This document shows positions 4,069 through 44,983 of a stretch of DNA of 45,185 bases, in pieces (the first letter of the stretch is position 1; every line of letters starts with the position of its first letter). Made by a program: the position numbers and the translations under genes. The notes under the pieces are model-generated. The model ran no database searches, had not been told where the DNA came from, and saw only the letters and a program-made list of their open reading frames with translations. The DNA is taken from positions 1-45,185 of the IMG/VR virus record IMGVR_UViG_3300027933_000001; one strand, given 5' to 3'.

Positions 4069-4071
4069 AAT

Positions 4072-4593
4072 TCAACCTAACTTTTTCTTTATTTTCCTTC
4101 TTAATTCTCTTTCTAGTTTCTTGTTTTTGCTATATATATAATATGTATTATCTTTAGTTTTCCTTACAAGTACAACCTCTTTCAAATGTATCCTTATGTT
4201 TTTATCTCCAGGCTTTCCTGTAACCTCTATTTTTTCATTATCTCTTTTTATTTCAATTGAAGAAACTCTTTCAAATATCAATGAGTGAGCGAAATAGAAT
4301 ATATCTCCTCTTGTTTTTACTCTCAATAGGAGAATTCCACATGGAAAAATTAAATACCTATAGTGTTCTATTCCTTTAGAATCTTTTAATTTCAATATAA
4401 CACCTTTAGAAGTTTTTTCAAATTTTATCCCATTCTCATCATCTATCTTCAAAAAAAATTCATCATCATTTATTCTCTGAATAGTAAATGAATGTCGTGA
4501 TATTAAATCAACTATGTCTTTTTTAACCGTAATAATTTTCCCGTTCACCATACGTAAAAATTTTCTCAATATTTTTTTCTTGTAAATATACAT
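4072..4593 (-). CDS. Hypothetical basic protein (start may be 4551)
   Basis: 173-aa ORF. Confidence 0.65.
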   Translation of the reverse strand: MYIYKKKILRKFLRMVNGKIITVKKDIVDLISRHSFTIQRINDDEFFLKIDDENGIKFEKTSKGVILKLKDSKGIEHYRYLIFPCGILLLRVKTRGDIFYFAHSLIFERVSSIEIKRDNEKIEVTGKPGDKNIRIHLKEVVLVRKTKDNTYYIYSKNKKLERELRRKIKKKLG

Positions 4594-4845
4594 GGTGAAA
4601 ACTACCCTAATTAATTAGCTAGCTAAATAAATATATAAAAAATGATAGACGTGAGGAGGCAGAAAAATTAGAAAATGGGAAAAAGGAAGGCTTAGCATAT
4701 CTACTTATTAACTCCTAAGTCGCCTTTTACTAGAGTGAGGAGGTTATGTCACTCGTAAGTAAAGAAAAACAAAACGCACTTAAAAAGAAGAAGAAGCTAA
4801 CTGAGCTTAATGACGAAGATGCAAATGACGAGGAGGTAATTACAA

Positions 4846-5106
4846 ATGAGTAATATTTGCGAGTTACTCAAGACTGAATATGAGCAGAACATGCAGAGGT
4901 ATAATATTCCAGACAAATGGAAAGCAGTGGCATATAACGTGTTAGTAAAGCTAGGGTATTATGATGAAGAAGGAAATAAAATAAAAGACGATGCCGAGTT
5001 TATAAACAGAGTTTTCAAAGTTGCTGAAAAATTGGATTCACTACATGTCAGTAAGATAAACAAAATGATGAAGATATGCGGGGAGACAGTTGGAGAAAGT
5101 AATTAG
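4846..5106 (+). CDS. Hypothetical protein
   Basis: 86-aa ORF with GGAGG RBS; first of a tightly packed run. Confidence 0.75.
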   Translation: MSNICELLKTEYEQNMQRYNIPDKWKAVAYNVLVKLGYYDEEGNKIKDDAEFINRVFKVAEKLDSLHVSKINKMMKICGETVGESN

Positions 5107-5431
5107 AGAGAGCGAAGTTAAGAAACTCAAGAAGAGTGAAGATATCAGGAATAATGATGAATTACTTAAGTATATTAAGTCTCTAGAAGATGAGAATGAG
5201 AAACTAAAGAAGCAAATCGATGAACTACAGCAAAAACTGAAAGAGCTGGAACTAAATATTAATCAATTAATTTATAGTTTTTGTGACGCACTCAATAAGT
5301 TAAAAAAACCAGCATTTTACCTGGAAAAGCCAGTAAATACTAAATTATACCAGATAGTCACGATAAACTATACAGATTATTATGTTGTATCCTTACAATT
5401 ATGTGAGGAGCTGAAATGGGTCAAACAATAA
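5090..5431 (+). CDS. Coiled-coil protein
   Basis: Heptad-like LEDENEKLKKQIDELQQKLKELE. Confidence 0.7.
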   Translation: MEKVIRESEVKKLKKSEDIRNNDELLKYIKSLEDENEKLKKQIDELQQKLKELELNINQLIYSFCDALNKLKKPAFYLEKPVNTKLYQIVTINYTDYYVVSLQLCEELKWVKQ

Positions 5432-5784
5432 TCATAGTTGCTTCACAAGCACAATTAGTCTATTTTTATATTTTCTCATTTTTGGTTATTGCATTTCTTG
5501 GCGTAATTATTTGGCTGTATTTCCGCGGATTCTTCAGAAAAATAGGCATCTTATCTTTACTGATGTTCTCATCCTACATAATTATGTACGAAAGCGGGTT
5601 TGCGTTCACTACACCTACCGATTATAACGTGACGTTAACGAACCCGTACAATACTACTACCGTTGTAGACCAACCATTAGACTTCTATTATACTGTATTC
5701 TACCTATCTTTCGCTATAGCTATAGTATCTACTTTACTCCTAGTTTATGAAATAATACAATACATTGCAAGGAGGTTCTTCTAA
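5416..5784 (+). CDS. Small membrane protein
   Basis: Three hydrophobic segments; N-x-T sequons in loop. Confidence 0.75.
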   Translation: MGQTIIIVASQAQLVYFYIFSFLVIAFLGVIIWLYFRGFFRKIGILSLLMFSSYIIMYESGFAFTTPTDYNVTLTNPYNTTTVVDQPLDFYYTVFYLSFAIAIVSTLLLVYEIIQYIARRFF

Positions 5785-6195
5785 ATGGATAAGCTAGATA
5801 TAATAAAGCAGGTTTCCTTTTACCTCGACTCCCTTAATTATGGAATTTCATCAAAACTTTTTTCTGAAGACCTTATATTAACAGAATTGAAGAAAGCTAC
5901 AGTAAGCTATTTCTCACATAGTATTCTGAGTATTGTTGGAAGTATAGATTTGTCAAACGCAAAAATGCCCTCTCATGTTATATCAGCAATAATTAACTTT
6001 ATCAGAAGTAGAGCATACGATCTTGCAAAACTAGACCAAAGAATAATAGATAATAATTATCAAACTCTCTTCATCTACACAACAATAAGGAGCATAATAA
6101 TGATAATGGCTGAAAGGCTAGGCATAACAGATGAAATAAACTCATTGTTTAACAGTTTAGAAGAAGGAGAGAACATTAGAAATAAAATAGGCTGA
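5785..6195 (+). CDS. Hypothetical protein
   Basis: 136-aa ORF abutting upstream stop. Confidence 0.75.
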   Translation: MDKLDIIKQVSFYLDSLNYGISSKLFSEDLILTELKKATVSYFSHSILSIVGSIDLSNAKMPSHVISAIINFIRSRAYDLAKLDQRIIDNNYQTLFIYTTIRSIIMIMAERLGITDEINSLFNSLEEGENIRNKIG

Positions 6196-6196
6196 C

Positions 6197-7689
6197 AAAA
6201 TGAAAGGCAAACCTCGCCCCTTCTAGGGGCGGGGTAAAAAATTTTAAGCGAAACATCTATTTCTCTTTAAGATGTCCTCCTCTGGTCAACTCTCAAGATA
6301 TGAGGAGCGGGAGCCGATTTCTCCCGCAATACCAGAGGAAGGCGTCTACGAAGTCGAGTATAAGAATAAGAGGACAAATGTTGTTAGACTTCTCCCAAAC
6401 GGTTTTCAGGAAAGGAAGTTAAGGAAGTTTGCAGACACGTCTGCCAGGTTGTTCAACGAGGTCAACTACGAGAGAAGACAGCAGTTCTTCCAACAACATC
6501 AAGTTGACTTCAAATCGACATGGGGCAAATACTACGAGAAGTACAAGGGTATACTAGGTGTTAATGCACAAGCAGTTCTTCAGAAGAACAACGAGGCATG
6601 GTCGTCATTCTTTTCACTCCTCAATCTGAAGAAAAAAGGAAAATTGCCACCGCATATGAACCACGTTTCACCACCTCGTTATTGGAAGAAGGAGAAGAAG
6701 AGGAAGTTACTCCTAGTTATCAGACAAGATAGATATGTTGTAGATGAGAAGAACCACAAGCTCATCCTCAAGGACTTCAACCTCGAAATAGAATTTGTTG
6801 GTGGGTTGAGGTGGTATGGCAAACAAGGTAGGTTGGAGATATATTATGACGACGTTGAGAACGCGTGGTACGCTTCAATACCAGTTGAAGTAGGCGTAGA
6901 AGAAACAAAGACTGGAAAGAAGAGTAAGTACATTGTGAGAGGAGAGAGAAAGTCAATCCAGGTTGAAGCCCCGAAGGGAAACAAGGTCGCATCCATCGAC
7001 TTGGGCATAAACATCCTAGCAAGCGTTGTAGTGGACGACGGTACTTGGTTACTCTATAAAGGTGTTAGAGCTAAGGAAGACTACTTCTATCTTCAAAAGA
7101 AGATAGCCGAGGTTCAGTCTCTCGCAGACAAGGCAAGAAATCTAGGAGAGTATGAAGCTCAGGAAGAACTAAACAGAGAGAAGAGGAGACTCTTTAAGAA
7201 ACTAACCAAGCGTCTACTTCACCTGTACAGAACCTTGGCATCTCATATGGTTAAAACACTTCACGATCAAGGAGTTTCGACCATTTATCTAGGCTACCCC
7301 TTCAATATCGCACAGGACAGGGGAAATAAATTCACCGTGAATTTGTGGTCTTACCATAAGTTGATGAACGCCATTAAGTTGAAGGCTCAAGAATACGGTA
7401 TGAAAGTGTACGAAGTTGTTGAGTACAACACATCAAAGTACTGTGCATACCATAACGTTGAAGTCAGTAGGAGACCGAGAGGAGTAGTCACTTGTCCTTT
7501 AGGGCACAAACTCCATTCAGATCTTAACGGTGCATTGAATATCTTGAAGAAAGCTGTTGGCATCACAATTTCAACAGTGAAGAAACCGTTATCTTTCCTA
7601 GTACTTCATAACGGAGTAGCACCCGTAAAGGGGTGTAACACCTAAGACCTCGGTGAACCCTCGTCCTTCCAGGGCGGGGAGGAGGTCAG
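6197..7689 (+). mobile_element. IS200/IS605-family solo-tnpB element (IS1341-like organisation)
   Basis: Left hairpin CTCGCCCCTTCTAGGGGCGGGG after TGAC; right hairpin GAACCCTCGTCCTTCCAGGGCGGGGAGGAGGTCAG; no tnpA. Confidence 0.88.
6272..7645 (+). CDS. tnpB: TnpB endonuclease
   Basis: SIDLG, VVEYNTSKYC, CAYH..CPLGH, HSDLNGALNI motifs. Confidence 0.92.
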   Translation: MSSSGQLSRYEEREPISPAIPEEGVYEVEYKNKRTNVVRLLPNGFQERKLRKFADTSARLFNEVNYERRQQFFQQHQVDFKSTWGKYYEKYKGILGVNAQAVLQKNNEAWSSFFSLLNLKKKGKLPPHMNHVSPPRYWKKEKKRKLLLVIRQDRYVVDEKNHKLILKDFNLEIEFVGGLRWYGKQGRLEIYYDDVENAWYASIPVEVGVEETKTGKKSKYIVRGERKSIQVEAPKGNKVASIDLGINILASVVVDDGTWLLYKGVRAKEDYFYLQKKIAEVQSLADKARNLGEYEAQEELNREKRRLFKKLTKRLLHLYRTLASHMVKTLHDQGVSTIYLGYPFNIAQDRGNKFTVNLWSYHKLMNAIKLKAQEYGMKVYEVVEYNTSKYCAYHNVEVSRRPRGVVTCPLGHKLHSDLNGALNILKKAVGITISTVKKPLSFLVLHNGVAPVKGCNT

Positions 7690-7765
7690 GGCGAGCCAAC
7701 GTTCACTATAAAAGCGAGGCTAGTAGGTGGAAAGTTAGAAGTCGTTAGCGTGAGTTAGCTCCGAC

Positions 7766-7810
7766 AAAACGAACGACAAGTCTAGTCCTTCAGAGCGGTG
7801 AAGAAGTCAT
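7766..7810 (+). mobile_element. Degenerate ~45-bp fused left/right-end IS605 remnant
   Basis: Aligns with 20014-20058 and with both ends of 6197-7689. Confidence 0.55.
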
Positions 7811-7814
7811 CTCT

Positions 7815-8137
7815 GTGAACTACCCCGCCCTAACGGACGGGGCATCCCCATCTCGCGATGAGGATTTCCTGCTTCTCAGAGCGACCTCGATCCCCCTTCA
7901 CCCACAGCGGAGGTTCCATCGAACGGAACCGTTCTGTAATGCCCCGTGTGGAAGAGGGGTTACGGAGGGTCACTCTCCACAGGCGTAAGTTCCCCCAGTC
8001 CCGAGGGTACGACCTCAGCTCTTACAGCCAGAGGTCTGTGTACATCTATTTTTTGATAACTATAAAAGGTTTCTGTAAGGGGGCTATCCATCCCCCATCT
8101 TACGGAGGGGGACTTCCGCCCCCTTAACCCCCAAAAG
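7815..8137 (-). mobile_element. ~323-bp SMN1-like non-autonomous IS605 element, copy 1
   Basis: Near-identical to 9744-10065 and 35458-35780; terminal hairpins; ends GTAGTTCAC; follows TTAA on element strand. Confidence 0.88.
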
Positions 8138-8163
8138 TTAAAAACACATAAGTACACTATTAA

Positions 8164-9195
8164 ATGATGCTATACATCGTTAGCAATTCAAAACTAAAGT
8201 CAGGTATCGGGCGTTATGCAAGCAGATTGCATTCTTACTTCCCAAATAGTAAATTGGTTCTTTTTAGAATGAAACCGTGGGAGGAGCCTGACGGTTTCGA
8301 TGAAGTTGTGCAATATAAATATTTTAACAAACTAGGAATAATTTACGATCTAATTACAAAGAGTGGTAAGTTCAGTAAATTTGCGTCTAAAAAACTGCTT
8401 CACTTAGTTTCGCCAGATTTCTTCCATGTTGCAAACGGTAGTATAGGAACAGTTCACGATCTGTTCCCACTATCTGAAAACACAGCTGTGAGTTCATATT
8501 ACCCGTTCTATTACAGGCTTTATTTCAAGTACGAAATAACACAAATCAAAAACCTGGAAGTTGTTATCGTCCCTAGCTTCTATACAGCAAGACAGCTGAA
8601 GAGATACGCAGACGAGAACGGCATCGAATTACCTAAGGTTATAGTAATCCACCATAGCGTTCCGAGGAGTTTTGTAAACGAAAGAGACGGAAACGTTATG
8701 AGGATCCGTGAAGAACTAGGTTTGCCTAAAGATAAGAAGATTGTAATTAACGTTGCACATGATGAACCAAGAAAGGGACTGAGTATAATAGATAGGATAC
8801 GTGAAGAATTACATAAGCTCGGCTTTATAATTATAACAGTTAATAACAAACGTGGTGATAAGTACTTCCTCGGCATAGATGATGAACTCCTCATTAAATT
8901 ATATATTGCTAGCGATGTATATTTCGCTCCTTCTATCGATGAAGGATTCAACATACCTATTATTGAAGCATTAGCAAATTCGTTACCAGTTGTTGCAAGA
9001 GATATACCCGCACATAGAGAGATATATTCATTCAACAATGGCGGAATTTTATTAGTAAGAGAGGAAGACTTCGTCCCAGCTATAATAAAAGCAAGCTATA
9101 TGAAGGCTAAACTTAATGAGTACTTTCTAGAAGATAGAGAAAGAGAAGAATACAAAAAAATTTATTCTAGGTTTCTGACTCCCTTCTCGCCCTAA
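8164..9195 (+). CDS. GT-B (family 4-like) glycosyltransferase
   Basis: TVHDL and PSIDEGFNIPIIEALANSLPVVARDIP (E-x7-E) motifs. Confidence 0.92.
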   Translation: MMLYIVSNSKLKSGIGRYASRLHSYFPNSKLVLFRMKPWEEPDGFDEVVQYKYFNKLGIIYDLITKSGKFSKFASKKLLHLVSPDFFHVANGSIGTVHDLFPLSENTAVSSYYPFYYRLYFKYEITQIKNLEVVIVPSFYTARQLKRYADENGIELPKVIVIHHSVPRSFVNERDGNVMRIREELGLPKDKKIVINVAHDEPRKGLSIIDRIREELHKLGFIIITVNNKRGDKYFLGIDDELLIKLYIASDVYFAPSIDEGFNIPIIEALANSLPVVARDIPAHREIYSFNNGGILLVREEDFVPAIIKASYMKAKLNEYFLEDREREEYKKIYSRFLTPFSP

Positions 9196-15700: not shown

Positions 15701-16461
15701 ACGACTAATGGCTTCACATTGAATGTAAATTTTGCAAGGATGTAAGATTTTTTATACAATTTTGTTCTGTTTAGGTGTGAATTCATCGGTAATAATGCTA
15801 AAAATGCATATGCTAGGTGTTTCATATCGCTTAACATATGTTCGTCTGCAGGTAAACCGTCAAGTGGGCATACTCCACTATTATGCTCTGTAAAGTAGTG
15901 TAATTGCAATTCTGATAAGGTTTGTGATTTATACCCGCATACAGGGCATTCGTATTCGTGAGAACCATAGATGTAATGTGTAAGGTTAACGCTTCTTAGT
16001 AAATGTATCTTATCCGCTTTACCCCACACTACAATACGTCTAGACGCAGTACTAGTTACATATAGATCTTCATCCCCAATAAGGTTCCTCAGGATATATT
16101 CAAGAATATCTCGTTCTATGCCAGCGACGTTAACACTTAGTATTAACCTAGTGTACGTTGAATCCAATTTCATTAACTTAATTATTACATGTAATTTTCT
16201 AGAAATAGTGTTTTCTTTCATTGACAAATCTAGCTTAGCGTTTTTCTCTATTTCATTATCAAGCCTTAATATTCTAGGTATGTACGGCTTGTCTATCTCG
16301 CTTAGGACTCTTATGAAATCTCTATATTTCGGTATATGTATACTAATAACGTTATTCTTACCGTCAAATTTGACGTTAGGATATACGCCAATCGAAGAAA
16401 AGAAGAGGTAAGCTTTCAGTTCATCTATTTCGTCGACATCATGCATTGTAATTACGATCAT
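15685..16461 (-). CDS. C2H2 zinc-finger-containing protein
   Basis: CPVCGYKSQTLSELQLHYFTEH. Confidence 0.8.
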   Translation of the reverse strand: MIVITMHDVDEIDELKAYLFFSSIGVYPNVKFDGKNNVISIHIPKYRDFIRVLSEIDKPYIPRILRLDNEIEKNAKLDLSMKENTISRKLHVIIKLMKLDSTYTRLILSVNVAGIERDILEYILRNLIGDEDLYVTSTASRRIVVWGKADKIHLLRSVNLTHYIYGSHEYECPVCGYKSQTLSELQLHYFTEHNSGVCPLDGLPADEHMLSDMKHLAYAFLALLPMNSHLNRTKLYKKSYILAKFTFNVKPLVVQRDL

Positions 16462-23834: not shown

Positions 23835-24819
23835 AATCGGAGATTTTGTAATTCAGGACAGGGATCCAGATAAGGGATTTCTTTATGTAGATTATGAAAA
23901 TGCGATGGGAGGAAAACTGTTAAGATATTTGGATTATCTTTATACTTCCCTAAGAAGCGGTGAGTTGAGCATTTTAATCACTCCTGGATTTGTGGCAAAG
24001 AACGGCGAAATAGTTCCTTCTCTTACGCCGTTTGTAAGGATGTGTTTTCAGGGGTATAGAAAGAGGATACAAGTACAGAGGTTAGTTGTTGTAGTAGGCG
24101 GTCAGGGAGTTGGAAAGTCTGTACTGGCAATTAAGGCTGGTGCTAATATCTATGCACTCAACGATATGAACGAAAACCTTCCTGTAGAGGAAAGGTTCAT
24201 TAATTACATTATAACTCTGTATCATATCGGCATTGACCCAATAGAGTTGAATAATTTTATAGAATTCCTTAAGGAGCATGGGCTAAGGTCTCCTTATTAT
24301 ATAATAGACGACGCTCAGTTATTGTTCTCCACTAACGTATACTTTACAAATAGGGATTTGTACGTCCATACATCTAACCTATTAACATTGATAAGGAGCA
24401 ATATAATGACGTTGGTTATGACTCTTCCTACAGACATTGCCGTGTTGAACTCAACAATTAAGAGAATGGAAGGAATAATACTAACGAAAGTTAATGATAT
24501 AGATAGGTTCACTGGGATAGCACTAGGTGTTAGCAGTTATGATTACAGCAGATACAGGATGTATACAAAAACTAGCAGAAACCGTTTCGTTAGTTATTAT
24601 GTTGAGTATAACGAACTTGACGCAAACGGTAACGTTATACCTTATAAGTCAAGGGAAGGAATATTTTCCAAGTATTTACCAGATAATATTTACAATATTT
24701 ATAATACTATTAGGGAAAACTACATTACACTTATACAGTCCTTATCGAGGAAGAGAATAAATGTGGGTAAAAGTAGAGAAGGAGGAGATGGAGAAAGCCT
24801 TATCGATGATAAAGAGTAA
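23824..24819 (+). CDS. P-loop ATPase
   Basis: Walker A GGQGVGKS; Walker B YIIDD. Confidence 0.85.
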   Translation: MEVKIGDFVIQDRDPDKGFLYVDYENAMGGKLLRYLDYLYTSLRSGELSILITPGFVAKNGEIVPSLTPFVRMCFQGYRKRIQVQRLVVVVGGQGVGKSVLAIKAGANIYALNDMNENLPVEERFINYIITLYHIGIDPIELNNFIEFLKEHGLRSPYYIIDDAQLLFSTNVYFTNRDLYVHTSNLLTLIRSNIMTLVMTLPTDIAVLNSTIKRMEGIILTKVNDIDRFTGIALGVSSYDYSRYRMYTKTSRNRFVSYYVEYNELDANGNVIPYKSREGIFSKYLPDNIYNIYNTIRENYITLIQSLSRKRINVGKSREGGDGESLIDDKE

Positions 24820-25858
24820 GTACAGAATTGACGACACTGTTGCAGAACTTATAGCAGACGTTTTCTTCATACTAAAAGGTAAGGAAGTTACAGAAGAAGG
24901 GAAAAAACTCGTTGAAAAGATAAATGAATTCTTCAGGGAGAATGAAGAAATACTACGTGTTATATTAGAGAGCGAACTACCAGACGATTACCTGATTAGA
25001 ATATCCGCATTAATAATACTCAGTTTGAAAGGAGGAAAGAAGGGAGATGCGTATGGAATGATACAGGAAGTAATAAACAAATACCACGAACAAAAGAAGA
25101 CCGCTTATGTTCTGTATAAGTATTCTGGAGTTTTTATCAGCCCACAAAAACTTGAGAAGATACCTAACGTTAAAGACATAGTGAGAGGATTGAAAATAAT
25201 AGAAGGAAGCATAGGTAGTAACACAAAAATAAACGGAATTTACCCAGGTTTTGAGGGATTAGATTTCACACAAAACTTTTACGAAGCAAATAGAAATGAG
25301 AAGGCACTTGCACTTATAGACGATGATATATTAATATATAAGCTACTCAACGGGTTCAAAAAATATCCAGGATATTCTAAAGGTTTCCCATCCGTATATG
25401 TGCTTATAGATTCTTCACAGAGCATGTCTGCACTTAATAGATTAAGTACTGCAAAGGCAATAGCTCTTGCAGTAGTTAAGAATTCTTTGATAAATAAATA
25501 TAAAGTAAGAGTAGGTTTCTTTAACGAGGCATTAAGGGAAATAATTGAACTTAAAACTCAGGAATCTTTAGAAAGATTTCTAAAAATAGAAGCAGAAGGT
25601 GTCACTGATATAGAATACTCATTGTCACAATTTATTGAAATAGCCGAACCTGCAAGTTCAGTCCTTCTAATAACCGACGCATTAGACGAAATAAGCGGAA
25701 ACATTATTACAAAACTCAAGGCAAAAAGGATAATACTCAACGTAATACAGCTCTTCGGGATTTACAACGAAAGGTTAGTTACAATAACTAAAAGCACTGG
25801 CGGTCTTTATATCGTCGTCAACGATTTAAAAGAGTTGAAAGAAAAAATAATAATATGA
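24761..25858 (+). CDS. von Willebrand factor A domain protein
   Basis: MIDAS DSSQS, GVTD, LLITD. Confidence 0.88.
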   Translation: MWVKVEKEEMEKALSMIKSKYRIDDTVAELIADVFFILKGKEVTEEGKKLVEKINEFFRENEEILRVILESELPDDYLIRISALIILSLKGGKKGDAYGMIQEVINKYHEQKKTAYVLYKYSGVFISPQKLEKIPNVKDIVRGLKIIEGSIGSNTKINGIYPGFEGLDFTQNFYEANRNEKALALIDDDILIYKLLNGFKKYPGYSKGFPSVYVLIDSSQSMSALNRLSTAKAIALAVVKNSLINKYKVRVGFFNEALREIIELKTQESLERFLKIEAEGVTDIEYSLSQFIEIAEPASSVLLITDALDEISGNIITKLKAKRIILNVIQLFGIYNERLVTITKSTGGLYIVVNDLKELKEKIII

Positions 25859-31480: not shown

Positions 31481-33115
31481 TTGATGAACTCATTGAGTGT
31501 ACTAAAGGACGTAATTTTGTCTTTGTCGAATAAGTTTGTAGATAGGGAGGAAGAAGTTCTTGCACTTACATCTTCTCTTGTACTAGGGAAGCTAGGTGCG
31601 AATATGTTACTAATAGGATACCCTGGTACAGCAAAGAGCTCTTTAGTAAAGGAGTTCTGCAGGACTCTAAACCTTAGCTATGGGGAACTCGTTCTTACTC
31701 CTACCATGCTTCCGTCTTCTTCACTTTACTATATAGACCAGATAAAGCTGATTAAGGAGAACAAAGTAGAAGTAAATCCTTCATCGTTAAGTTACGCTGA
31801 TATAGCGTTTTTAGATGAGATAGGTAGGGCTAATGATATAATGCTACACTCAATTCTCTCATATCTTCTTGATAGAGAATTTTTCATAGACCAAATAACA
31901 GCTAAAATGAAGACGAGGACACTAACTGTTGTCGGGGCTACAAATTTTGTTAACTTAGATAGTAAGTTTGATGCAGTTTATGATAGGTTCACGTATTCTA
32001 TCGTTACTTTTCCGCCGAGCTCGGATGAATTCGAAGCTGTGTATGAGAAGGGTATTGAGATATTAAATAGAAAACTTGATGACGATGGGGACGGTAACGT
32101 TGAAGTTATTCCGATTACTGTCAATAGTAAGAAGCCTAAATTGGATAGAGAAGAAATAATAGAGCTTGCGAGAGTCGCGTTATCTGAAGTTAGCCAAAGT
32201 GACATTTTGATAGCTAAGAAAATCTATTCTGCGTTCAATATGGATAAAATAGGGGAAAATAGGTTAGTCAAAATTACGATTGATGAACTATCTAAACCTC
32301 TTGCGGATATATTTAAAAAATATGTTGCGGATAGAGAAGTACTGTTCCCTGTAAAGTCGTCAATGAGAAAGTTGCAATTGTTACCTCCTACCCTTGCGTT
32401 ATTGCGTATGCTCGGTTATTATGACCCAGTAAACATAGCTAAGGCTATCTCGTGGTTTTTCATAATTCCAGACGAGCAATATTTCCCGCTCTATATAAAG
32501 TCGCGTGAGGAGGGAATAAGCATACTGCAAAAGAAGATCCTTAACATAATCCATGATCTATTGCCTAAAGTATCCCAACCTACATTTAATGATAAGATGC
32601 TGAACGAGGCAGAAATGATAATCAGATTTTTATCTAACGCACTTATAAGCATTAAGAAAATCCCCAATCATGTGAAGGATGTTATAACTGTAGAAAGTAA
32701 TGATATAATAATCCACGTTGACACCTTACTTAACATATTAAGCACAGAAGGAAAACTGAGCGATTTCCAGTTATTCAACTTCGGTCTTTATGGCGTTAAT
32801 AAACCCGTATTCAAGCTGATTAGGAAAATTGTATCGCTTTATGATAAAGATATGATAAACACGTTGGATATGCAGAAAAAGCTGGAAATACAGAAGAAAC
32901 TACAGTCTGCAATACCGCTCATAGCAACAATCATCAGTGACGTCTATGACATATATGTGGCATATAATAACGGTATTGAAGACAATATGAGCAAATCACT
33001 CTTCAAAAGAATGCTTAATAACGCTGGCTTAGTTACATCTGCAGACATTAATGATTTTAAAAAGAGAATGTTAGAAGATATAAAGGTCGAACTCCTAACG
33101 AAAATCTCAGCATAA
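31481..33115 (+). CDS. MoxR/RavA-family AAA+ ATPase (ATV p618-like)
   Basis: FVDREE, GYPGTAKS, FLDEIGRAN, GATN, AVYDRF. Confidence 0.9.
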   Translation: MMNSLSVLKDVILSLSNKFVDREEEVLALTSSLVLGKLGANMLLIGYPGTAKSSLVKEFCRTLNLSYGELVLTPTMLPSSSLYYIDQIKLIKENKVEVNPSSLSYADIAFLDEIGRANDIMLHSILSYLLDREFFIDQITAKMKTRTLTVVGATNFVNLDSKFDAVYDRFTYSIVTFPPSSDEFEAVYEKGIEILNRKLDDDGDGNVEVIPITVNSKKPKLDREEIIELARVALSEVSQSDILIAKKIYSAFNMDKIGENRLVKITIDELSKPLADIFKKYVADREVLFPVKSSMRKLQLLPPTLALLRMLGYYDPVNIAKAISWFFIIPDEQYFPLYIKSREEGISILQKKILNIIHDLLPKVSQPTFNDKMLNEAEMIIRFLSNALISIKKIPNHVKDVITVESNDIIIHVDTLLNILSTEGKLSDFQLFNFGLYGVNKPVFKLIRKIVSLYDKDMINTLDMQKKLEIQKKLQSAIPLIATIISDVYDIYVAYNNGIEDNMSKSLFKRMLNNAGLVTSADINDFKKRMLEDIKVELLTKISA

Positions 33116-37706: not shown

Positions 37707-38378
37707 TCAGAATACTCCTGCGTTTTTAAGTATTAAGTACACTGCGTACCTTAGCACTTTAGACCTTGTAACTTTATGATTTATTGCAAAGTTATCGAGC
37801 TTCTCTAACAACTTCTTATCCATCTTTATCGACAACACACCAGTATCACCGTCAAGAAGCTTCTTATCATCGTAATTGGCATCAATCTCTTTGCTATTTA
37901 AAATAGTATTAGCAAGTGTATAGCGTATTAATTCGCCAGCAGTTTTACCTATTTTGCATGAATACGAAATAAGTAAATTTTTAATTTCCTTTGAGATCTT
38001 TACTGTAATTATAATGTTGTTGTGTTCAAGAACATCTTCTCTATATTGTACACCAACACTTTCTAGTCTGTGCACCTTCACTGCAAAAGGCTTAGGCTTT
38101 GCTGTCGTATAAACCCTTATTTTATACAGTAAATCGTTGCCAAACATAAAACTTATACGTTGACCATTCTTATCCATCATCACTACGTATTGACCATTAT
38201 TGAAAGTCACAAAAAATCCGCTCTCGCTTAGTATTTTTAGCAGTACATTAACTTTGTTTTTAGAAATATAATCGAGATGAAAAGTGAATTCTGTATCTGC
38301 TTCTCTAGTTATAGTGTATTTTATATTTAAAGAATCTAAATGTTCTTTTATTAGATCTACAACTGATGACAGAGTCAT
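37707..38378 (-). CDS. Protein with two C-terminal RHH domains
   Basis: [15 protein letters not shown] and [27 protein letters not shown]. Confidence 0.8.
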
Positions 38379-39244
38379 ATCGCTCGCCCCTCGCCATATT
38401 TTTTCTTACACCAGGCTATGCAACCAGTGTCGTCATCGCCAGGGTCACCAAAATGAACCTTGCAATCATGAATGCACTGATATAGGTCAGCAAGACCCAT
38501 ACTAGAAAGTATACATTTAGGTATGCCGTCACGATATACACCTTCTGGACATCTGCTAATTTCGAAACCCCATATTCCGTTAAGGACATTCTCTACAGTC
38601 ATTGGTCTATCACTAGTTAAATTGTTCAATATTATGCAATTAGCCCCAGCATACTTAAAGAGGCGGGGATGGACTTTCTTTACTTCTTCTAGCATTTTCC
38701 ATGCAACTTGACGTATTTCCCACTGTGCCCTTGAGCATAATCTGAGGGCAAAGAAGTTGTATAACTCTCTGGCGTTCATTGTCACAACGATGTTTGTATT
38801 TACTCCGTTAGGTAGGACGTATCTGGCATCTTCCTCTGGAACACCGTTCTGTAATAGCTCATAGTAGTATTTGTAAGCGTCGTCGTAAGCCTTCTTAACT
38901 AGTTCCTCGTTCCTCTTTTCCGCAGAAGGCGGAGTTACTGGTTGGTAGTACTCATCAACGGGCTTAGCAAACCTATGGCTCATTTGTGTGTATGATGCAA
39001 TGCGGTGTCTCACTAGTTGATGAGAGGCAACCCTGCTTATACCCTCTATTGAGAAGGTATAACTACTGTGTTCTAGTGGTGACCAGTAGCCGTGAATGAT
39101 AGCGTCACGGATCCACACTTCTACTTCCTCATCCGTCATTGTCTTCTCGTGGTAATCCCAACCCTTTCTAGACCTGCTCATCTTAGAAGCGATTGCTACT
39201 ATTTTTTCTCCATCTTTCGTATAAGAAACTAGTTCAACTTTCAT
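38375..39244 (-). CDS. thyX: Flavin-dependent thymidylate synthase
   Basis: [16 protein letters not shown] (RHR-x7-S), [20 protein letters not shown]; start revised to MKVELV. Confidence 0.95.
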
Positions 39245-39260
39245 CTTTTTCGCCCCGTTT

Positions 39261-40112
39261 TTAAAATAATTGAGAAATTTTCCTTTCTTCACTAGCTATT
39301 GGTATGTCATATTTGTACGGTGGTTTTAGTTTTTCCCTCAATAACTTTAGCGTGTTTATTATACTTTCGTAGTCGAGCTCAGCCATTAACTCGTCGTAAC
39401 TGCTAGATCCATAATATGCTGAATATATTGACCAAGGTGCTTCATAAAGCAAACTGGTTACGTGTTCGACCATATATTTATGAAATAGTAGTATTTTATT
39501 CAAATTTTCAATAAACTCTTTCAGGCATGCCTTAGGTAATGCGTAGCCTTTTATTGATAATAAAGAATTGAGGAGATACAATGCGAGACCAGTAACCTTA
39601 TAGAACCCACCACCTTCTTCAGTTACAAGACCTAGGGCTAACAACGGTACTACGTCCTTTTTAGGTGCTTTAAATCTGAGCGATGAAATGTAAGAAGTGT
39701 ATTTATTTAGCAGTTCGGATAAATCTCGCAACTCAATTAAACTTGATTTATGAGCCAGTAGTGTTATGACCAATGCTATAATACCTAGCTCCACAGTTTT
39801 ATAATATTCATCGTCGATAAGGTCTACATCAAAATATTTCTTTATAATATCCTCAAATTTGCTTAACGCGTCAGGAGATATATTAAGAATAACATCGCTT
39901 ACAAACCCATTTTTAAAAGCTTCTATTATAAGCCTCTCGTTTTTTATTGGCTTGCTTGAAAAGAAAACATTGAGAAAGTTCATTGCTTCTTCAGCAACAA
40001 TATTAGGGGAAAGGGAAGGGCTTTCCACATTTAACACCCCGAGAACAAAATACCAGGTCGCCTTTTTAGAAGATACTTCCGATTTAGAAAAACGAATAAC
40101 TAGAGCTATCAT
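39261..40112 (-). CDS. Hypothetical protein
   Basis: 283-aa ORF starting immediately after the terminal CRISPR repeat. Confidence 0.75.
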
Positions 40113-40401
40113 ATTTCAGTTCTTCCTTATTTCAACTGAGGTAGAGATGTTAAAGAGACATATGGAAAACTTTTAGTTCTTACTTATTTCGACAAAAGTG
40201 GGTACTGGTAAGGTAGAATGGAATAGAGTTTTTCAGTTCTTACTTATTTCAACTATTTTTACCCCGTCCCTGGAAGAGGCGGGGCAACTTCCCGCTACGA
40301 CGCCCCCTTCCCTCGCTCTACCCATCTTTTAGTTCTTCCTTATTTTAGCTCACTTTCCAAAAATAAAAACTTTTCAGTAGGCACTTTTAGTTCTTCCTTA
40401 A
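40113..40401 (-). CRISPR. Virus-borne mini-CRISPR array: 4 full repeats plus 1 truncated repeat, no cas genes in window
   Basis: 24-bp repeats at 40113, 40170, 40230, 40326 and 40384 (partial); minus-strand consensus GTTGAAATAAG(G/T)AAGAACT(A/G)AAAG; spacers of 33, 36, 72 and 34 bp. Confidence 0.82.
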
Positions 40402-40403
40402 CC

Positions 40404-40739
40404 CTAGAAGGGGCGAGGTTTATTGCTCGCTTCATCAGCCTCCTCCAGCATCTTATCTAGCATTTTTTCTATAAGTATGTATAAAAATTTCCCTTTTTCT
40501 TCATGTGTAAGCATACTATAATCGGAAAAAATACTGTATAAAATTACTTGTTGTCTATATGGGAGTTTTACAGCTCTAATGACATACCTATAAATCTTAT
40601 CAGCAGACATTGCAATCCCTCGCATTTTGTATAATCCATATATTGAAAGAAAATAATCGATAAGCTTCTTTGTCTGATTATAGTTAAACATAGCTGACAC
40701 GGTGTTTGCAAGGTATTCTATAAAGTCTTCACGTTCCAT
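40404..40739 (-). CDS. Hypothetical protein (stop lies in an IS605 left-end remnant)
   Basis: C-terminal NKPRPF* is encoded by AAACCTCGCCCCTTCTAG. Confidence 0.7.
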   Translation of the reverse strand: MEREDFIEYLANTVSAMFNYNQTKKLIDYFLSIYGLYKMRGIAMSADKIYRYVIRAVKLPYRQQVILYSIFSDYSMLTHEEKGKFLYILIEKMLDKMLEEADEASNKPRPF

Positions 40740-40986
40740 TGTTCATCCTCCTTTCTAACTCCTTCCTATGTTTCGTTAGTATTATATCTATAATGTCATC
40801 TAAGTACTCGTCGACTATATCTTCCAGGTCAATTCTATCAAATTTGACGTCGTCAATATCTGCTTCATAAACAGTATCCTCAGCATACGGATAGCACTGA
40901 CTACAACTACCACTACAACCATAGAAGTCACTATCACACCATGTATTTTCCTCTAGGAATTTATAGGGTATCTTAACCTTCACCAT
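40729..40986 (-). CDS. Small acidic Cys-cluster protein
   Basis: C-x6-C-x3-C-x2-C; GGTGA RBS. Confidence 0.75.
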   Translation of the reverse strand: MVKVKIPYKFLEENTWCDSDFYGCSGSCSQCYPYAEDTVYEADIDDVKFDRIDLEDIVDEYLDDIIDIILTKHRKELERRMNNGT

Positions 40987-41958: not shown

Positions 41959-42783
41959 CTACTCTTCTTGTTGTTGAATATTCTCTTCAACGAGAACCAA
42001 TGGAATTTTATCTAAACCTAGGAGACGGCATAGGTAATTGTCACACTCCTTGTAACCTACAATTTTGTATTTTTCTGGGTTGTTATTTGCTAAATTAAGA
42101 ATTTCGTCATAAATACTCTTTGCAATTTCTCTAAGACGATCTTCTACCCTTTCACGAATTGCGTCTACAACTTCATATATTTTATCAGCTATATCGTCTG
42201 GTACATCGCCAAACACCTTCTCATAAGCACGTTGAAAAGCACTTGCCATGTCCTGAAAATACCAACATAAAGTGCATGGAAGAGTATCAACGATCATCGC
42301 CACAAAAGCACCGATTTCTGGTCTATTACTAAAATCCTCAATATATATGATATCAGGCAATTCGACTACATGACCTTCTAAACCTTCTGGATCCAAGCTA
42401 TATGAATCGAAACAGTCCTCTAACGCATCGATTATGTGCTTAACTATGGGTTCAACATCATAATTCTTTTTCAAGTAATCAAACAGGTAATCTAGCATAT
42501 CTTCTTGCATATGATAGTCTTTCAGTGTTTCTAACATACATTTAAAATCATAATCGCACGTAGTAGCTATTAATTGTGCTACTTCGTCTTTCGGGAATTT
42601 TTTATAGTTTTTGAAAACATAATCAGAGAAATTAACGCTTATATCATACAATACGTTATCCAGCTCTTTCCTATTTTCTATGCCTAAAATTTTCCTTAGT
42701 TTCTTCCTATTATTCAGCACTTCAGTAACACAATTCAAATTGCAATACTCACTTATTTTTAGAAAATATTCGTTTGTATTCAT
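41959..42783 (-). CDS. Acidic helical hypothetical protein
   Basis: 274-aa ORF with RBS and TATA-like TTTAAATA. Confidence 0.8.
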   Translation of the reverse strand: MNTNEYFLKISEYCNLNCVTEVLNNRKKLRKILGIENRKELDNVLYDISVNFSDYVFKNYKKFPKDEVAQLIATTCDYDFKCMLETLKDYHMQEDMLDYLFDYLKKNYDVEPIVKHIIDALEDCFDSYSLDPEGLEGHVVELPDIIYIEDFSNRPEIGAFVAMIVDTLPCTLCWYFQDMASAFQRAYEKVFGDVPDDIADKIYEVVDAIRERVEDRLREIAKSIYDEILNLANNNPEKYKIVGYKECDNYLCRLLGLDKIPLVLVEENIQQQEE

Positions 42784-42884: not shown

Positions 42885-43951
42885 GTGTGCAATAGGATTC
42901 TTATTGAAAACCAGCCCTTGCTCATGTGCAATATCATTCTTATTGACTCTTTCTTTTGCTTGTGTGCAGAGCTATTATTAATTGAGGTATATATTTGCTT
43001 ATGTGCAATAGTGGTATTATTGAGCAACTTAATTGCTTATGTGCAATACAAATATTATTGAATTCTACTATTGCTTATGTGCAAAACGTGTATTATTGAA
43101 TGCATTCTTTGCTTATGTGCAGGTAGATTGTTATTGACTTACCTCATTGCTTGTGTGCAGTCAACTGATTATTGAAACGATTTCCTGCTAATGTGCAGGT
43201 TATTTGTTATTGAACTTTGCTCTTGTTTATCTGCAACGACCACGTTATTAAGCCTTTTGCTTGCTTGTGTGCATTGCTTATCTTATTGAAAGGTATTATT
43301 GCTTGTGTGCAGTACATTAATTATTGAAATAGCTGATTGCTTGTGTGCAGTTGCATCGATATTGAGGAGTAGTATTGCTTATGTGCAGGTAAGGGATTAT
43401 TGAGCTATATGTTTGCTCATGTGCAGTTGATCCTTTATTGAGTGTTTCTCTTGCTAATGTGCGGTCATGAGTTTATTGAATAATGTTATTGCTTGTGTGC
43501 AGTTAGATTGTTGTTGAATATGTTTCTTGCTTGTGTGCAATACGCCTCTTACTGAATTCCTGAATTGCTCGTGTGCAATAGGGTTCTTGTTGAAAACCAA
43601 CCCTTGCTCATGTGCAGTTTTACATTTATTAACGATACCTTTTGCTCATGTGCAAGACGGCGTTTATTGACGTTATCTTTTGCTTATGTGTAAGTTTGCC
43701 GTTATTGATCTTTATTTTTGCTTATGTGTATATGACCTCTTATTAATTTTTTCGCTTGCTTATGTGCAGTTTGTATTTTATCAACAATCAGGATTGCTTA
43801 TGTGCAGTAGGGTGTTTATCGACTATACTTATTGCTTGTGTGCAGTCCAACCGTTATTGAGGTATATATTTGCTTATGTGCAAGAATGGCTTTATTGAGC
43901 GTACTTCTTGCTTATGTGCAATATCGTTCTTATTGATTTTTTCCTTATGTA
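42885..43951 (-). ncRNA. TIGR-type tandem interspaced guide array (28 units, 38-bp period)
   Basis: Plus-strand unit TTGCTT(A/G)TGTGCA-N9-TTATTGA-N9 with almost all spacers unique; begins directly after the stop codon of the Nop/IS110-like gene. Confidence 0.88.
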
Positions 43952-44983
43952 TTATTTAATAATCTTTTTCTTCTTAAGCCACGTTGTAACCTCCTCTCTG
44001 TTTATACCTAGTTCTTCTATTATCTTTTCAAATTTAGCTTTATATTTTGCAGTCTTCGTGTCAACGTAATAGTCTGTAATTGGCGATTCAATGAAATCTT
44101 CGTGCTTCTTGAGGACTTCGTATTCTTTCCCCAACACTACCTTGTAAGCCTCATGTAATGGCACACCTTGCCTATAGTGTAAAGAGATTGCGAAATACTG
44201 TGATAATAGTAAGGATATTGCTTTCCTGATAGCAGTCCTCTGTACTCTTAGCTTATTCCAGTCTGGATGCTTAGTTGCGATTTCTTCTTTAAATGATTTT
44301 ATTATCTTTGCGTAAACACCGCCAGCTAATATGAGGTTGTTAGCTAAAATTCCTAGCAGAAATGTTTTTACTGTTCTGTTATACTTAACGTTTTTCGCTG
44401 ACGTGCCAATAAGTTTCGTCCCATCGTTAGGGCATAACCACCCTTCCTTCGAGGGAATTGCTGGTTTCCCATTCGAGGACTCACCAGCGTAATAGTAATA
44501 TCCGCATTTAGAACATGTAAACATTACGGCTAAACCAGCGTACTTCCTGAACTTATTAATGTTATACTGAAACTTTGGTGGATATGCATAAACGATAAGT
44601 CTAGCACCGTTAACAGCTCCTATCCCCCTAATAAACACCAGGAAGTTAGTAAATTCAGGGAACTTAGTTACCACCTTGCCTATAAGTCCCTTGGCTATCT
44701 CCTCTTGTCTGAGTAGTTCCATGAACCTCTCTATGAGGTCATTAGACGGCGTTTCTTCAACAATTCTCACAGGCTCACCGCATACTGGACATTTATCGCG
44801 TTTTTCGTCTTCCTTAAGTAATATCATATGACCGTTCTTGCACGCTGTATATCTCCTTAGGAAGACCCACTTATTGTTCTCTTTTTTTGCCCCTATCCTG
44901 TTCCCAAATGCTACTCTAAGTTTTATTATATCATCTCTGAATGCTACCAAATCTCTTAAAGGAACTAAATCTGCCTCGCTCAT
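43952..44983 (-). CDS. Tas-like (TasA-type, nuclease-less) Nop/IS110-related RNA-binding protein with two Zn-ribbon insertions
   Basis: LRDLVAFRDDIIKLRVAFGNRI coiled coil; FLVFIRGIGAVNGARLI, FRKYAGL, YNRTVKTFL, RTAIRKAISLL; no DEDD/RuvC or HNH seen; adjacent dual-spacer array. Confidence 0.82.
   Translation of the reverse strand: MSEADLVPLRDLVAFRDDIIKLRVAFGNRIGAKKENNKWVFLRRYTACKNGHMILLKEDEKRDKCPVCGEPVRIVEETPSNDLIERFMELLRQEEIAKGLIGKVVTKFPEFTNFLVFIRGIGAVNGARLIVYAYPPKFQYNINKFRKYAGLAVMFTCSKCGYYYYAGESSNGKPAIPSKEGWLCPNDGTKLIGTSAKNVKYNRTVKTFLLGILANNLILAGGVYAKIIKSFKEEIATKHPDWNKLRVQRTAIRKAISLLLSQYFAISLHYRQGVPLHEAYKVVLGKEYEVLKKHEDFIESPITDYYVDTKTAKYKAKFEKIIEELGINREEVTTWLKKKKIIK

What the first reader, a model, noticed from the sequence alone, without database searches (positions are those of the whole stretch)
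40113..40401. Cas-less mini-CRISPR array in a viral genome
Seen: five 24-bp repeats ending in a Sulfolobales-like ACT(A/G)AAAG handle on the minus strand, with 33-36-bp unique spacers. Established: some archaeal viruses carry mini-arrays that use host Cas proteins against competing viruses. Inference: these spacers target co-infecting elements, or the repeats act as decoys. The repeat sequence should also identify the host.
Basis: partly seen in the sequence, partly recalled or inferred. Interest (0 to 1): 0.75.

Follow-up and report, generated by a model that had tools for sequence, protein, structure and literature searches.

The report
Cas-less mini-CRISPR array in ATSV-like virus
A hot-spring archaeal virus closely related to Acidianus tailed spindle virus carries a short CRISPR array copied from its host and no cas genes; the same locus is already flagged in the published virus genome, and I found no targets for its spacers.

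Summary
The repeats are real: four full 24-nt copies and one truncated copy at 40113-40400, with crRNA sense on the minus strand.

- **Identity of the window.** It is a strain of Acidianus tailed spindle virus (ATSV). ATSV's GenBank record already annotates the orthologous 290 bp as a 'possible viral CRISPR locus'.
- **Host match.** The repeat differs by 1-3 bases from a repeat family that forms long arrays (up to 121 repeats) in a Stygiolobus genome and in hot-spring metagenomes, including the window's own sample. Those arrays lie beside type I-A, I-D or III cas genes. They carry spacers matching this virus, 12 of the 19 best with a CCN flank.
- **Cas-less.** The window has no cas genes, and the array has no host-type leader.
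- **Not all intervals are spacers.** Only two look like guides (36 and 33 nt). One 34-nt interval holds a T-run/TATA-like block, and one is a 72-nt GC-rich hairpin element.
- **Small spacer pool.** The same three guide-length spacers recur, shuffled and with point changes, in nine viral variants from two virus lineages.
- **Targets and handles.** None has a detectable target. Viral repeats carry handle changes essentially never seen in host repeats.

The CRISPR origin and the host link are confirmed. Targeting of rival viruses is unproven, and a decoy role is not excluded. This is a known locus of a known kind.

The parts
40384..40400 (-). R5: truncated first repeat, keeping only repeat positions 8-24; it abuts the stop codon (40404-40406) of the upstream ORF
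   Evidence: truncated in the same way in all ATSV-like variants
40350..40383 (-). alpha: 34-nt AT-rich interval with a T5-A-T5 block (TTTATATT in ATSV); probably a terminator/TATA-like regulatory block rather than a spacer; it also holds a repeat-end remnant ACTGAAAAG
   Evidence: sequence; conserved in all ATSV-like variants; the promoter/terminator role is inference
40326..40349 (-). R4: repeat with a degenerate 5' end (GCTAAAAT...) and handle ACTAAAAG
40254..40325 (-). beta: 72-nt GC-rich (0.61) element with a 3' hairpin followed by TAAAAA, directly 5' of a repeat; not a conserved ORF; the hairpin resembles the left end of the window's TnpB insertion sequence
40230..40253 (-). R3: full repeat, handle ACTGAAAA
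40194..40229 (-). gamma: 36-nt guide-length spacer; a diverged copy (31 of 34 aligned) occurs in viral variant L276
40170..40193 (-). R2: full repeat, handle ACTAAAAG
40137..40169 (-). delta: 33-nt guide-length spacer, present at 91-100% identity in 8 other viral loci of two lineages
40113..40136 (-). R1: last repeat, 23 of 24 identical to the host consensus GTTGAAATAAGGAAGAACTGAAAG (final G changed to T)
40088..40112 (-). trailer: 25 nt ending in T5, nearly invariant in ATSV-like variants; a possible terminator of the array transcript
   Evidence: the terminator role is inference
39261..40028 (-). downstream gene (homologue of ATSV_B256), with real start at GTG 40028-40026; function unknown, predicted mostly helical, no Cas signature
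40404..40739 (-). upstream gene (homologue of ATSV_C111), function unknown

Best explanation
The locus is a virus-borne, leaderless mini-CRISPR array without cas genes. It is the orthologue of the ATSV 'possible viral CRISPR locus' and derives from the array type of the virus's own Sulfolobales host.

**Proposed mechanism (inferred).**
- It is transcribed on the minus strand, either from a TATA-like block in alpha or by read-through of the surrounding minus-strand operon.
- Host Cas6 cuts the repeats 8 nt from their 3' end.
- This releases two crRNA-sized products, gamma and delta, with host-like handles, which load into host type I-A, I-D or III complexes.
- Most likely these guides act against another mobile element or strain that shares the host (superinfection exclusion). 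The target has not been sampled.
- Alpha and beta are not guides. Alpha is regulatory, and beta is a structured 5' element.
- The array changes by recombination between repeats that shuffles ready-made repeat-spacer modules among co-infecting viruses, not by leader-directed acquisition.

**Shown:** CRISPR origin, strand, host match, absence of cas genes and leader, module shuffling.
**Inferred:** transcription, processing, loading, targeting.
For: **Repeat and host.**
- The repeat is 21-23 of 24 identical to host arrays: Stygiolobus sp. CP850M with 35 repeats and an upstream leader region, and about 90 long metagenomic arrays with 3524 repeats.
- Host spacers are 33-37 nt in 97% of cases. The viral gamma, delta and epsilon are 33-36 nt.
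- Arrays of this family sit next to a type I-A cassette in the window's own sample (L241), next to type I-D genes (L248/L082) and next to type III genes (L256).
- 19 host spacers match the window strongly, 12 of them with a 5' CCN flank. Examples are 39/39, 37/37 and 34/34 matches, and 34/34 from L241.

**The viral locus.**
- The orthologous ATSV locus is annotated as a possible CRISPR locus. ATSV shares alpha and beta but has a different spacer in place of gamma and delta.
- Some variants have perfect host-type handles in front of delta and gamma (L005, L276).
- Delta is identical between an ATSV-like contig (L217) and SMV-like contigs (L005/L025/L263), although 4 of 48 flanking repeat bases differ and the flanks are unrelated. 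This suggests its sequence matters or that it was exchanged recently.
- The array lies in sense within a tightly packed minus-strand gene series.

**Precedent.** SPV1/SPV2 and ATV carry mini-arrays (PMC6858448).
Against: - No protospacer was found for alpha, beta, gamma, delta or epsilon anywhere searched. In particular there is no reciprocal targeting between the window and ATSV, unlike SPV1/SPV2.
- Only three guide-length spacers recur in nine variants, so there is no sign of ongoing acquisition.
- There is no host-type leader.
- In the window both guides have a handle with one change (G20A or G24A). Host repeats are practically invariant at those positions: 1 of 3524 and 3 of 3524 differ.
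- The repeats differ from each other, unlike real arrays.
- There is no expression data.
- The searches need fairly close or exact seeds, and the host chromosome could not be scanned for targets.
Confidence: 0.5

Rival explanations
1. RNA anti-CRISPR (Racr-like) decoy. The repeat units are transcribed and titrate host Cas6 and backbone subunits into non-productive complexes, weakening the host immunity that demonstrably targets this virus. The 'spacers' are filler.
For: - The host arrays of this repeat family carry many spacers against the virus, so there is a motive.
- Viral handles carry G20A in 13 of 28 repeats and G24T in 10 of 28. Hosts differ at these positions in 1 and 3 of 3524 repeats, none of them G24T.
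- No targets were found, and there is no leader.
- SMV4 keeps only a solitary repeat behind a TATA-like box and a GC hairpin.
- The 72-nt interval would give an aberrant product.
- The class is established for phage solitary repeats (reviewed in PMC11656645).
Against: - Guide-length intervals (33-36 nt) are kept exactly in the host range.
- Spacer sequences are conserved across lineages at least as well as the repeats, which a pure decoy would not require.
- Some variants have fully canonical handles.
- No archaeal Racr has been shown experimentally, to my knowledge.
Confidence: 0.25
2. Decaying relic now serving as an intergenic regulatory region. An old captured array has diverged in its repeats and is retained because the region holds the terminator of the upstream genes and promoters for the downstream ones. 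It has no CRISPR-related activity.
For: - The repeats all differ from each other, and the first one is truncated.
- Alpha contains a T5-A-T5 / TTTATATT block, and the trailer ends in T5. A TATA-like box precedes the real GTG start of the downstream gene.
- There is no leader, no targets were found, and the spacer pool is small.
Against: - The core of the repeat and the spacer lengths are maintained in nine variants and in two unrelated genomic contexts, ATSV-like in sense and SMV-like in antisense to the flanking genes.
- Modules are exchanged between lineages and keep their unit structure, which argues for selection on the unit itself.
Confidence: 0.15
3. Recombination handle. The repeats serve as homology for exchange with host CRISPR arrays or with other viruses, for example to integrate into arrays or to capture or destroy host spacers.
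For: - Module orders differ between variants (gamma-delta against delta-gamma'; epsilon with or without delta), and identical delta occurs in two lineages. This shows recombination at repeats.
- The repeats are 21-23 of 24 identical to the host repeat.
Against: - No viral spacer is shared with any of 2897 host spacers.
- No virus-array junction was seen among about 100 metagenomic array contigs.
- 24 nt is short for homologous recombination.
Confidence: 0.05
4. Iteron or operator cluster for a viral DNA-binding protein, unrelated to CRISPR.
For: Short direct repeats lie in an intergenic region next to small ORFs of unknown function, with an RHH-domain ORF 2 kb away.
Against: - The repeat is nearly identical to a bona fide host CRISPR repeat over all 24 nt.
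- The spacing equals the host unit length (57-60 against 58-61).
- The same units occur in unrelated genomic contexts.
Confidence: 0.03

Closest known systems
'Possible viral CRISPR locus' of Acidianus tailed spindle virus (KU645528.1, 11703-11992; Hochstein et al. 2016, paper not held in the library)
   Same: Orthologous site between the C111 and B256 homologues. It has the same truncated first repeat, the same alpha interval and the same 72-nt GC-rich element, and the flanks are 83-86% identical.
   Different: The window has one more repeat-spacer unit. Its gamma and delta replace ATSV's single epsilon spacer. Point changes occur in the repeats.
Mini-CRISPR arrays of portogloboviruses SPV1/SPV2 and of Acidianus two-tailed virus (PMC6858448)
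   Same: Cas-less arrays in Sulfolobales viruses with host-type repeats and 1-2 guide-length spacers in intergenic regions. The array position is conserved between related strains while spacer content differs.
   Different: - SPV arrays have host-like promoter-bearing leaders; here there is none.
- SPV spacers target the sister strain; here no target was found.
- SPV repeats belong to the CRISPR-A consensus and ATV's to CRISPR-B. I did not compare this repeat family with the four consensuses because Fig. 1a is not readable here.
- Here the repeats are mutated, the spacer pool is tiny and shared between lineages, and a 72-nt structured element sits in a spacer position.
RNA anti-CRISPRs / solitary repeat units of phages (reviewed in PMC11656645)
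   Same: Repeat units of the host's type carried without cas genes. SMV4 has a solitary unit of this same repeat. The virus is under attack by the matching host system.
   Different: Here there are several units with canonical spacer lengths and conserved spacer sequences. The inhibition mechanism is untested in archaea.
Host arrays of the GT(C/T)GAAATAAG(G/A/C)AAGAACTGAAAG family (Stygiolobus sp. CP850M; hot-spring metagenomes)
   Same: 24-nt repeat, unit length 57-61, minus-strand sense defined by the leader.
   Different: Host arrays have 7-121 identical repeats, conserved leader families and adjacent cas genes of type I-A, I-D or III. Their spacers are diverse (2897 unique) and show a CCN flank on targets.

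Membership tests
CRISPR array (generic) | Direct repeats of 23-50 nt alternating with non-repeated spacers of similar, regular length | tested here: met
   4 full and 1 truncated 24-nt repeats. Intervals are 33, 36 and 34 nt, with one aberrant interval of 72 nt.
CRISPR array (generic) | Repeats (near-)identical to each other within the array | tested here: not met
   All five copies differ from one another. They carry 1-3 changes from the host consensus, and the first copy is truncated.
CRISPR array (generic) | Adjacent cas genes or a leader | tested here: not met
   No cas genes among 56 window ORFs with NCBIfam, PADLOC or Pfam. No similarity to three host leader families.
Virus-borne mini-CRISPR array (sensu PMC6858448) | Repeat of the same type as the host's arrays | tested here: met
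   21-23 of 24 identity to arrays in Stygiolobus and in metagenomes of the same sample. Those arrays target this virus.
Virus-borne mini-CRISPR array (sensu PMC6858448) | One or two spacers, no viral cas genes | tested here: met
   Two guide-length spacers (gamma, delta), plus alpha and beta, which are probably not guides. There are no cas genes.
Virus-borne mini-CRISPR array (sensu PMC6858448) | Promoter-bearing leader similar to host leaders | tested here: not met
   BLAST of 37 host leaders against the window and viral loci gives nothing near 40400-40800. A TATA-like block in alpha is only inferred.
Virus-borne mini-CRISPR array (sensu PMC6858448) | Spacers match related viruses or other mobile elements | tested here: not met
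   No protospacer in INPHARED, PLSDB, IMG/VR seeds or the fetched loci.
Virus-borne mini-CRISPR array (sensu PMC6858448) | Transcribed and processed into crRNAs used by host effectors | not testable with these tools
   No transcriptome data are available here.
RNA anti-CRISPR / solitary repeat unit | Host-type repeat unit carried without cas genes and with its own promoter | tested here: inconclusive
   Repeat units are present. TATA-like boxes lie upstream in both the ATSV-like and SMV-like contexts, but there is no promoter tool for archaea and no expression data.
RNA anti-CRISPR / solitary repeat unit | Inhibits the cognate CRISPR-Cas system | not testable with these tools
   This needs an interference assay.
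TIGR array | Two alternating short repeats (8-12 nt) with 9-nt spacers next to a Nop-domain Tas gene | tested here: not met
   The finding has one 24-nt repeat and 33-36-nt spacers. A true TIGR array lies 2.5 kb away at 42885-43945.

The most novel reading that the evidence does not exclude
The locus is not an adaptive array. It is a fixed, virus-maintained gene for a few conserved crRNA-like RNAs.

- Three guides (gamma, delta, epsilon) would be shared and shuffled among ATSV-like and SMV-like bicaudaviruses.
- They would be fronted by a structured GC-rich element related to an insertion-sequence left end.
- Their deliberately altered 5' handles (G20A, G24T) would either poison host Cas6, type I-A, I-D or III complexes, or redirect them to a conserved host or competitor target that has not been sampled.
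Probability: 0.25. Interest if true: 0.6.

Novelty: already known. Interest (0 to 1): 0.3.

Why it matters
If the guides are functional, this virus uses the very immune system that targets it, either to fight competitors or to blunt immunity. That adds a large tailed spindle virus to the few archaeal cases of virus-borne arrays.

The comparative picture obtained here is what goes beyond the existing annotation:
- a tiny, conserved, shuffled spacer pool;
- no leader;
- mutated handles;
- a structured element in a spacer slot.

It gives concrete, cheap tests to separate guide use from decoy use. Practically, the repeat ties ATSV-like viruses to hosts with this repeat family, and to type I-A targeting with a CCN flank in the same spring.

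Tried and rejected
- **Rfam.** Nothing at gathering threshold in the whole window and only chance-level hits at E up to 10 around the array.
- **tRNAs.** None in the window, so the GC-rich element is not a tRNA fragment or attachment site by that test.
- **Fold of the 72-nt element.** Not better than shuffles (z about 0). The SMV-like counterpart is modestly better (z -2.3 to -2.9).
- **Small ORF in beta.** It begins with ATG and is open in the window and in ATSV, but the frame breaks in variant L198. Rejected as coding.
- **'The last repeat abuts the start codon of the next gene.'** Rejected. The first 28 codons are not conserved, ATSV has a stop there, and homologues start at GTG 40028.
- **Flanking 283-aa protein as a hidden Cas6.** It has no family hits. 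The AF2 model is poor (pLDDT 43) and mostly helical, so no fold search was run.
- **Protospacer candidates.** A 27-of-33 match to delta in IMG/VR lies in a Clostridium-type phage and has no CCN flank, so it is chance. The epsilon seeds gave only 20-23 of 36 matches in unrelated contigs.
- **Original ATSV paper.** PMC4794678 is not held, so what its authors wrote about the locus is known here only from the GenBank note.

Full report
**1. The observation.**
- Reading 39800-40700 and running the repeat finder shows five copies of one repeat at 40113-40136, 40170-40193, 40230-40253, 40326-40349 and 40384-40400, with start-to-start spacing 57, 60, 96 and 58.
- The last copy keeps only the 3' 17 nt of the unit.
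- An 18-nt core with up to three mismatches occurs five times in these 290 bp and once elsewhere. The expectation is 0.55 hits in the whole window, and none of 100 shuffles reached six.
- The intervals are 33, 36, 72 and 34 nt.
- The whole block fills the gap between two minus-strand ORFs, 40404-40739 and 39261-40112.

**2. What the window is.**
- The window is 94% identical over most of its length to Acidianus tailed spindle virus (ATSV, KU645528, Bicaudaviridae). Identity is 83-86% around the finding.
- It is the IMG/VR contig 3300027933_000001, equal to Ga0208549_100093. A 64-kb sibling contig has an identical array.
- In the ATSV record the syntenic 290 bp, between the C111 and B256 genes, is already annotated as repeat_region, 'possible viral CRISPR locus'.
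- The pairwise alignment shows that ATSV has one repeat-spacer unit fewer. It shares the truncated repeat, the 34-nt interval and the 72-nt element, and it has a different spacer where the window has two.

**3. Is the repeat a host CRISPR repeat?** Yes.
- One scan of GTDB species representatives found a 35-repeat array in Stygiolobus sp. CP850M with repeat GTCGAAATAAGGAAGAACTGAAAG, 34-37-nt spacers and a non-coding, leader-like region upstream.
- One metagenome scan with a two-repeat pattern returned 108 stretches. About 90 of them are long arrays of up to 121 repeats from hot-spring samples, including several from Ga0208549, the window's own sample.
- Four repeat variants occur. The commonest, GTTGAAATAAGGAAGAACTGAAAG, differs from the window's R1 only in the last base.
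- From these arrays I extracted 3524 repeats and 2897 unique spacers, 97% of them 33-37 nt long.

**4. Do those hosts meet this virus?** Yes.
- Nineteen host spacers match the window at E of 1e-5 or better over at least 70% of their length.
- Examples are 39/39 at 2205-2243, 37/37 at 4340-4376 and 34/34 at 16364-16397.
- Another 34/34 match, at 44409-44442, comes from contig L241 of the same sample.
- Twelve of the nineteen have CCN immediately 5' of the protospacer, against about one expected by chance.
- L241 carries a type I-A cassette (Csa2, Cas5a, Cas3', Cas3'', Csa4) beside its array.
- Other arrays of the family lie beside type I-D genes (Csc2, Cas3'; L248 and the Stygiolobus locus) or type III genes (Csx7, Cas10; L256).
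- The closest named relatives of the L241 Cas3' are only about 50% identical (Sulfurisphaera, Saccharolobus). The host is therefore a Sulfolobales member without a close named genome. The ATSV record names Acidianus sp. CHAS.

**5. Cas-less and leaderless.**
- Pfam on 30 ORFs, and NCBIfam and PADLOC on 56 window ORFs, give no Cas1, 2, 3, 4, 5, 6, 7, 8 or 10.
- The only Cas-related hits are two TnpB proteins (64-1104, 6272-7645), which also match Cas12f-type models, and a TIGR-Tas protein.
- The window is 45 kb of a roughly 64-71-kb genome, so strictly this holds for the window.
- Host leaders fall into three conserved families. None has any similarity upstream of the viral array.

**6. Anatomy in crRNA sense (minus strand).** The order is: stop codon of the upstream ORF, R5 (truncated), alpha (34 nt), R4, beta (72 nt), R3, gamma (36 nt), R2, delta (33 nt), R1, trailer.
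- *Alpha.* It is AT-rich and contains T5-A-T5 in the window and TTTATATT after a purine-rich stretch in ATSV and others. That is what archaeal terminators and BRE/TATA promoters look like. This rests on my knowledge of Sulfolobales signals, not on a tool. I therefore read alpha as regulatory.
- *Beta.* It is GC-rich (0.61 against about 0.29 for the repeats). It ends in a hairpin followed by TAAAAA and is conserved in all ATSV-like variants with indels that break its small ORF.
- *Trailer.* The 25 nt after R1 end in T5 and are nearly invariant.
- *Downstream gene.* It starts at GTG 40028, not at the ATG that touches R1. The intervening codons are closed by a stop in ATSV, and all nine homologues begin at the GTG position.
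- *Conclusion.* The window holds two guide-length units (gamma, delta) and ATSV holds one (epsilon).

**7. Comparison of viral variants.** The scans also returned viral copies of the locus: ATSV-like contigs L198, L217, L236/L237, L253 and L276; SMV-like contigs L005/L025/L263 and L240/L270; and SMV4 itself with a single repeat.
- Only three guide-length spacers occur in all of them.
- The orders are:
  - alpha-beta-gamma-delta (window);
  - alpha-beta-epsilon (ATSV);
  - alpha-beta-epsilon-delta (L198, L236, L237);
  - alpha-beta'-delta (L217);
  - alpha-beta-delta-gamma' (L276);
  - GC element-epsilon-delta (L240, L270);
  - GC element-delta (L005 group);
  - GC element plus a lone repeat (SMV4).
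- Delta is 91-100% identical throughout. It is identical between ATSV-like L217 and the SMV-like L005 group, whose flanks are unrelated.
- A given spacer tends to keep the same variant of the repeat in front of it, so repeat-spacer units move as modules.
- This is shuffling of a small pool by recombination at repeats. It is not the open-ended turnover reported for SPV1/SPV2 (PMC6858448).
- In the SMV-like context the array is antisense to its neighbours. It is preceded, in crRNA sense, by a TATA-like box and a different GC-rich hairpin, whose stem is kept by an A-T to G-C double change between SMV4 and L005.

**8. Repeat quality.** Positions 1-7, 12, 20 and 24 were free in my search pattern. 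The remaining positions were fixed by it and say nothing.
- Position 20: G in 3523 of 3524 host repeats, but A in 13 of 28 viral repeats.
- Position 24: G in 3521 of 3524 host repeats, but T in 10 and A in 1 of 28 viral repeats.
- Both positions lie in the 8-nt part that becomes the crRNA 5' handle in Sulfolobales systems (established knowledge).
- In the window the handles in front of gamma and delta each have one such change. In L005 and L276 they are canonical.

**9. Targets.** None was found.
- The window's array, and a variant array carrying epsilon, were compared with 50,697 phage and archaeal-virus records at E up to 10. Only ATSV's own locus and the SMV4 repeat came up.
- PLSDB plasmids gave only chance hits.
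- IMG/VR was scanned with seeds for both halves of delta, the centre of gamma, the core of epsilon, and wobble-tolerant patterns for delta and gamma. Only the arrays themselves and chance matches came back. One chance match, 27 of 33, lies in a Clostridium-type phage.
- BLAST of all spacer variants against the window, the ATSV region and every fetched locus, including 2897 host spacers, gave nothing.
- The window's spacers do not hit ATSV, and ATSV's does not hit the window.

**10. Mechanism.**
- The shown facts fit a captured piece of the host's array that the virus keeps without cas genes.
- I commit to the reading that it is transcribed in sense and cut by host Cas6, and that gamma and delta are used as guides by host complexes against an unsampled element (0.5).
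- Three points support this: the exact maintenance of guide length, the conservation of spacer sequence across lineages, and the precedent of SPV1/SPV2 and ATV.
- The main rival is an RNA decoy (0.25). It is favoured by the handle changes, the lack of targets, the solitary unit in SMV4 and the fact that the matching host system attacks the virus.
- A relic doubling as a terminator/promoter region (0.15) and a recombination handle (0.05) follow.
- An operator or iteron cluster unrelated to CRISPR is contradicted by the host match (0.03).

**11. Comparison and novelty.**
- The locus is the orthologue of one already flagged in ATSV in 2016. It belongs to the known class of virus-borne mini-arrays and repeat units (PMC6858448, PMC11656645).
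- As a member of the SPV-type class it fails two tested features, leader and targets in relatives. It also fails the generic criterion of identical repeats.
- So I file it as 'CRISPR-derived mini-array, function open' rather than as a proven SPV-type array.
- I rate it already known and of low to moderate interest. The comparative details in sections 7-9 are the new part.

Noticed in passing
window 42885-43945 (minus strand) and ORF 43952-44983 (minus): A TIGR-Tas system. About 28 units of 38 nt (13-nt edge repeat, 9-nt spacer, 7-nt loop repeat, 9-nt spacer) lie directly downstream of a 343-aa ORF. The ORF hits NCBIfam TIGR_Tas_endo at E 7.6e-13, below the curated cutoff. ATSV's equivalent array is the one cited in the TIGR-Tas paper (PMC12045711, ref 39). 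Host CRISPR spacers hit the Tas ORF (34/34 at 44409-44442).
   Followed up: partly
window 6200-7690; 3576-3885 (minus); 40254-40280: A TnpB-only insertion sequence (ORF 6272-7645) has GC-rich end hairpins, and a roughly 300-bp MITE has the same ends. The MITE's left end is preceded by GAACTGAAAG, the last 10 nt of the host CRISPR repeat. The hairpin plus TAAAAA at the 3' end of the 72-nt element beta resembles this left end (23 nt identical in variant L198). This could reflect an old insertion into the array or a shared promoter/hairpin module.
   Followed up: partly
window 64-1104: A second TnpB-family ORF (346 aa, NF040570 E 2e-72). It is about 80% identical at DNA level to a 'putative transposase' of Acidianus two-tailed virus 2.
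   Followed up: no
window 39261-40112: The mechanical ORF is 28 codons too long. Homologues, including ATSV_B256, start at GTG 40028, and the upstream codons are closed by a stop in ATSV. The protein has no family hit, and its AF2 model is poor (pLDDT 43) and mostly helical.
   Followed up: yes
L293 (SMV4, KP282678.1) 546-569: An unannotated solitary copy of the same CRISPR repeat in Sulfolobus monocaudavirus SMV4. It is preceded by a GC-rich hairpin and a TATA-like box, in the intergenic region 441-759.
   Followed up: partly
L241 (Ga0208549_100313) 3929-9031: A host contig from the window's own sample carries a complete-looking type I-A interference cassette next to an array whose spacer 13 matches the window 34/34 with a CCA flank. 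An IS607-type transposase and a TnpB follow it.
   Followed up: partly
L082 4748-5096: In the region upstream of the Stygiolobus array's first repeat there are further direct repeats at 58-59-nt spacing with a different sequence. They may be the decayed end of another array.
   Followed up: no
window 41959-42783 (minus): A 274-aa ORF between the B149 homologue and the TIGR array. ATSV has no counterpart at that place, and the ORF is 68% identical at DNA level to SMV3.
   Followed up: no
window 3751-4068; 37707-38378; 38375-39292; 31481-33115 and 24761-25858: Virus-encoded homologues of host functions: a Sul7d-type chromatin protein, an aCcr1-like RHH cell-cycle regulator domain, ThyX, and a MoxR ATPase with a VWA protein.
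   Followed up: no
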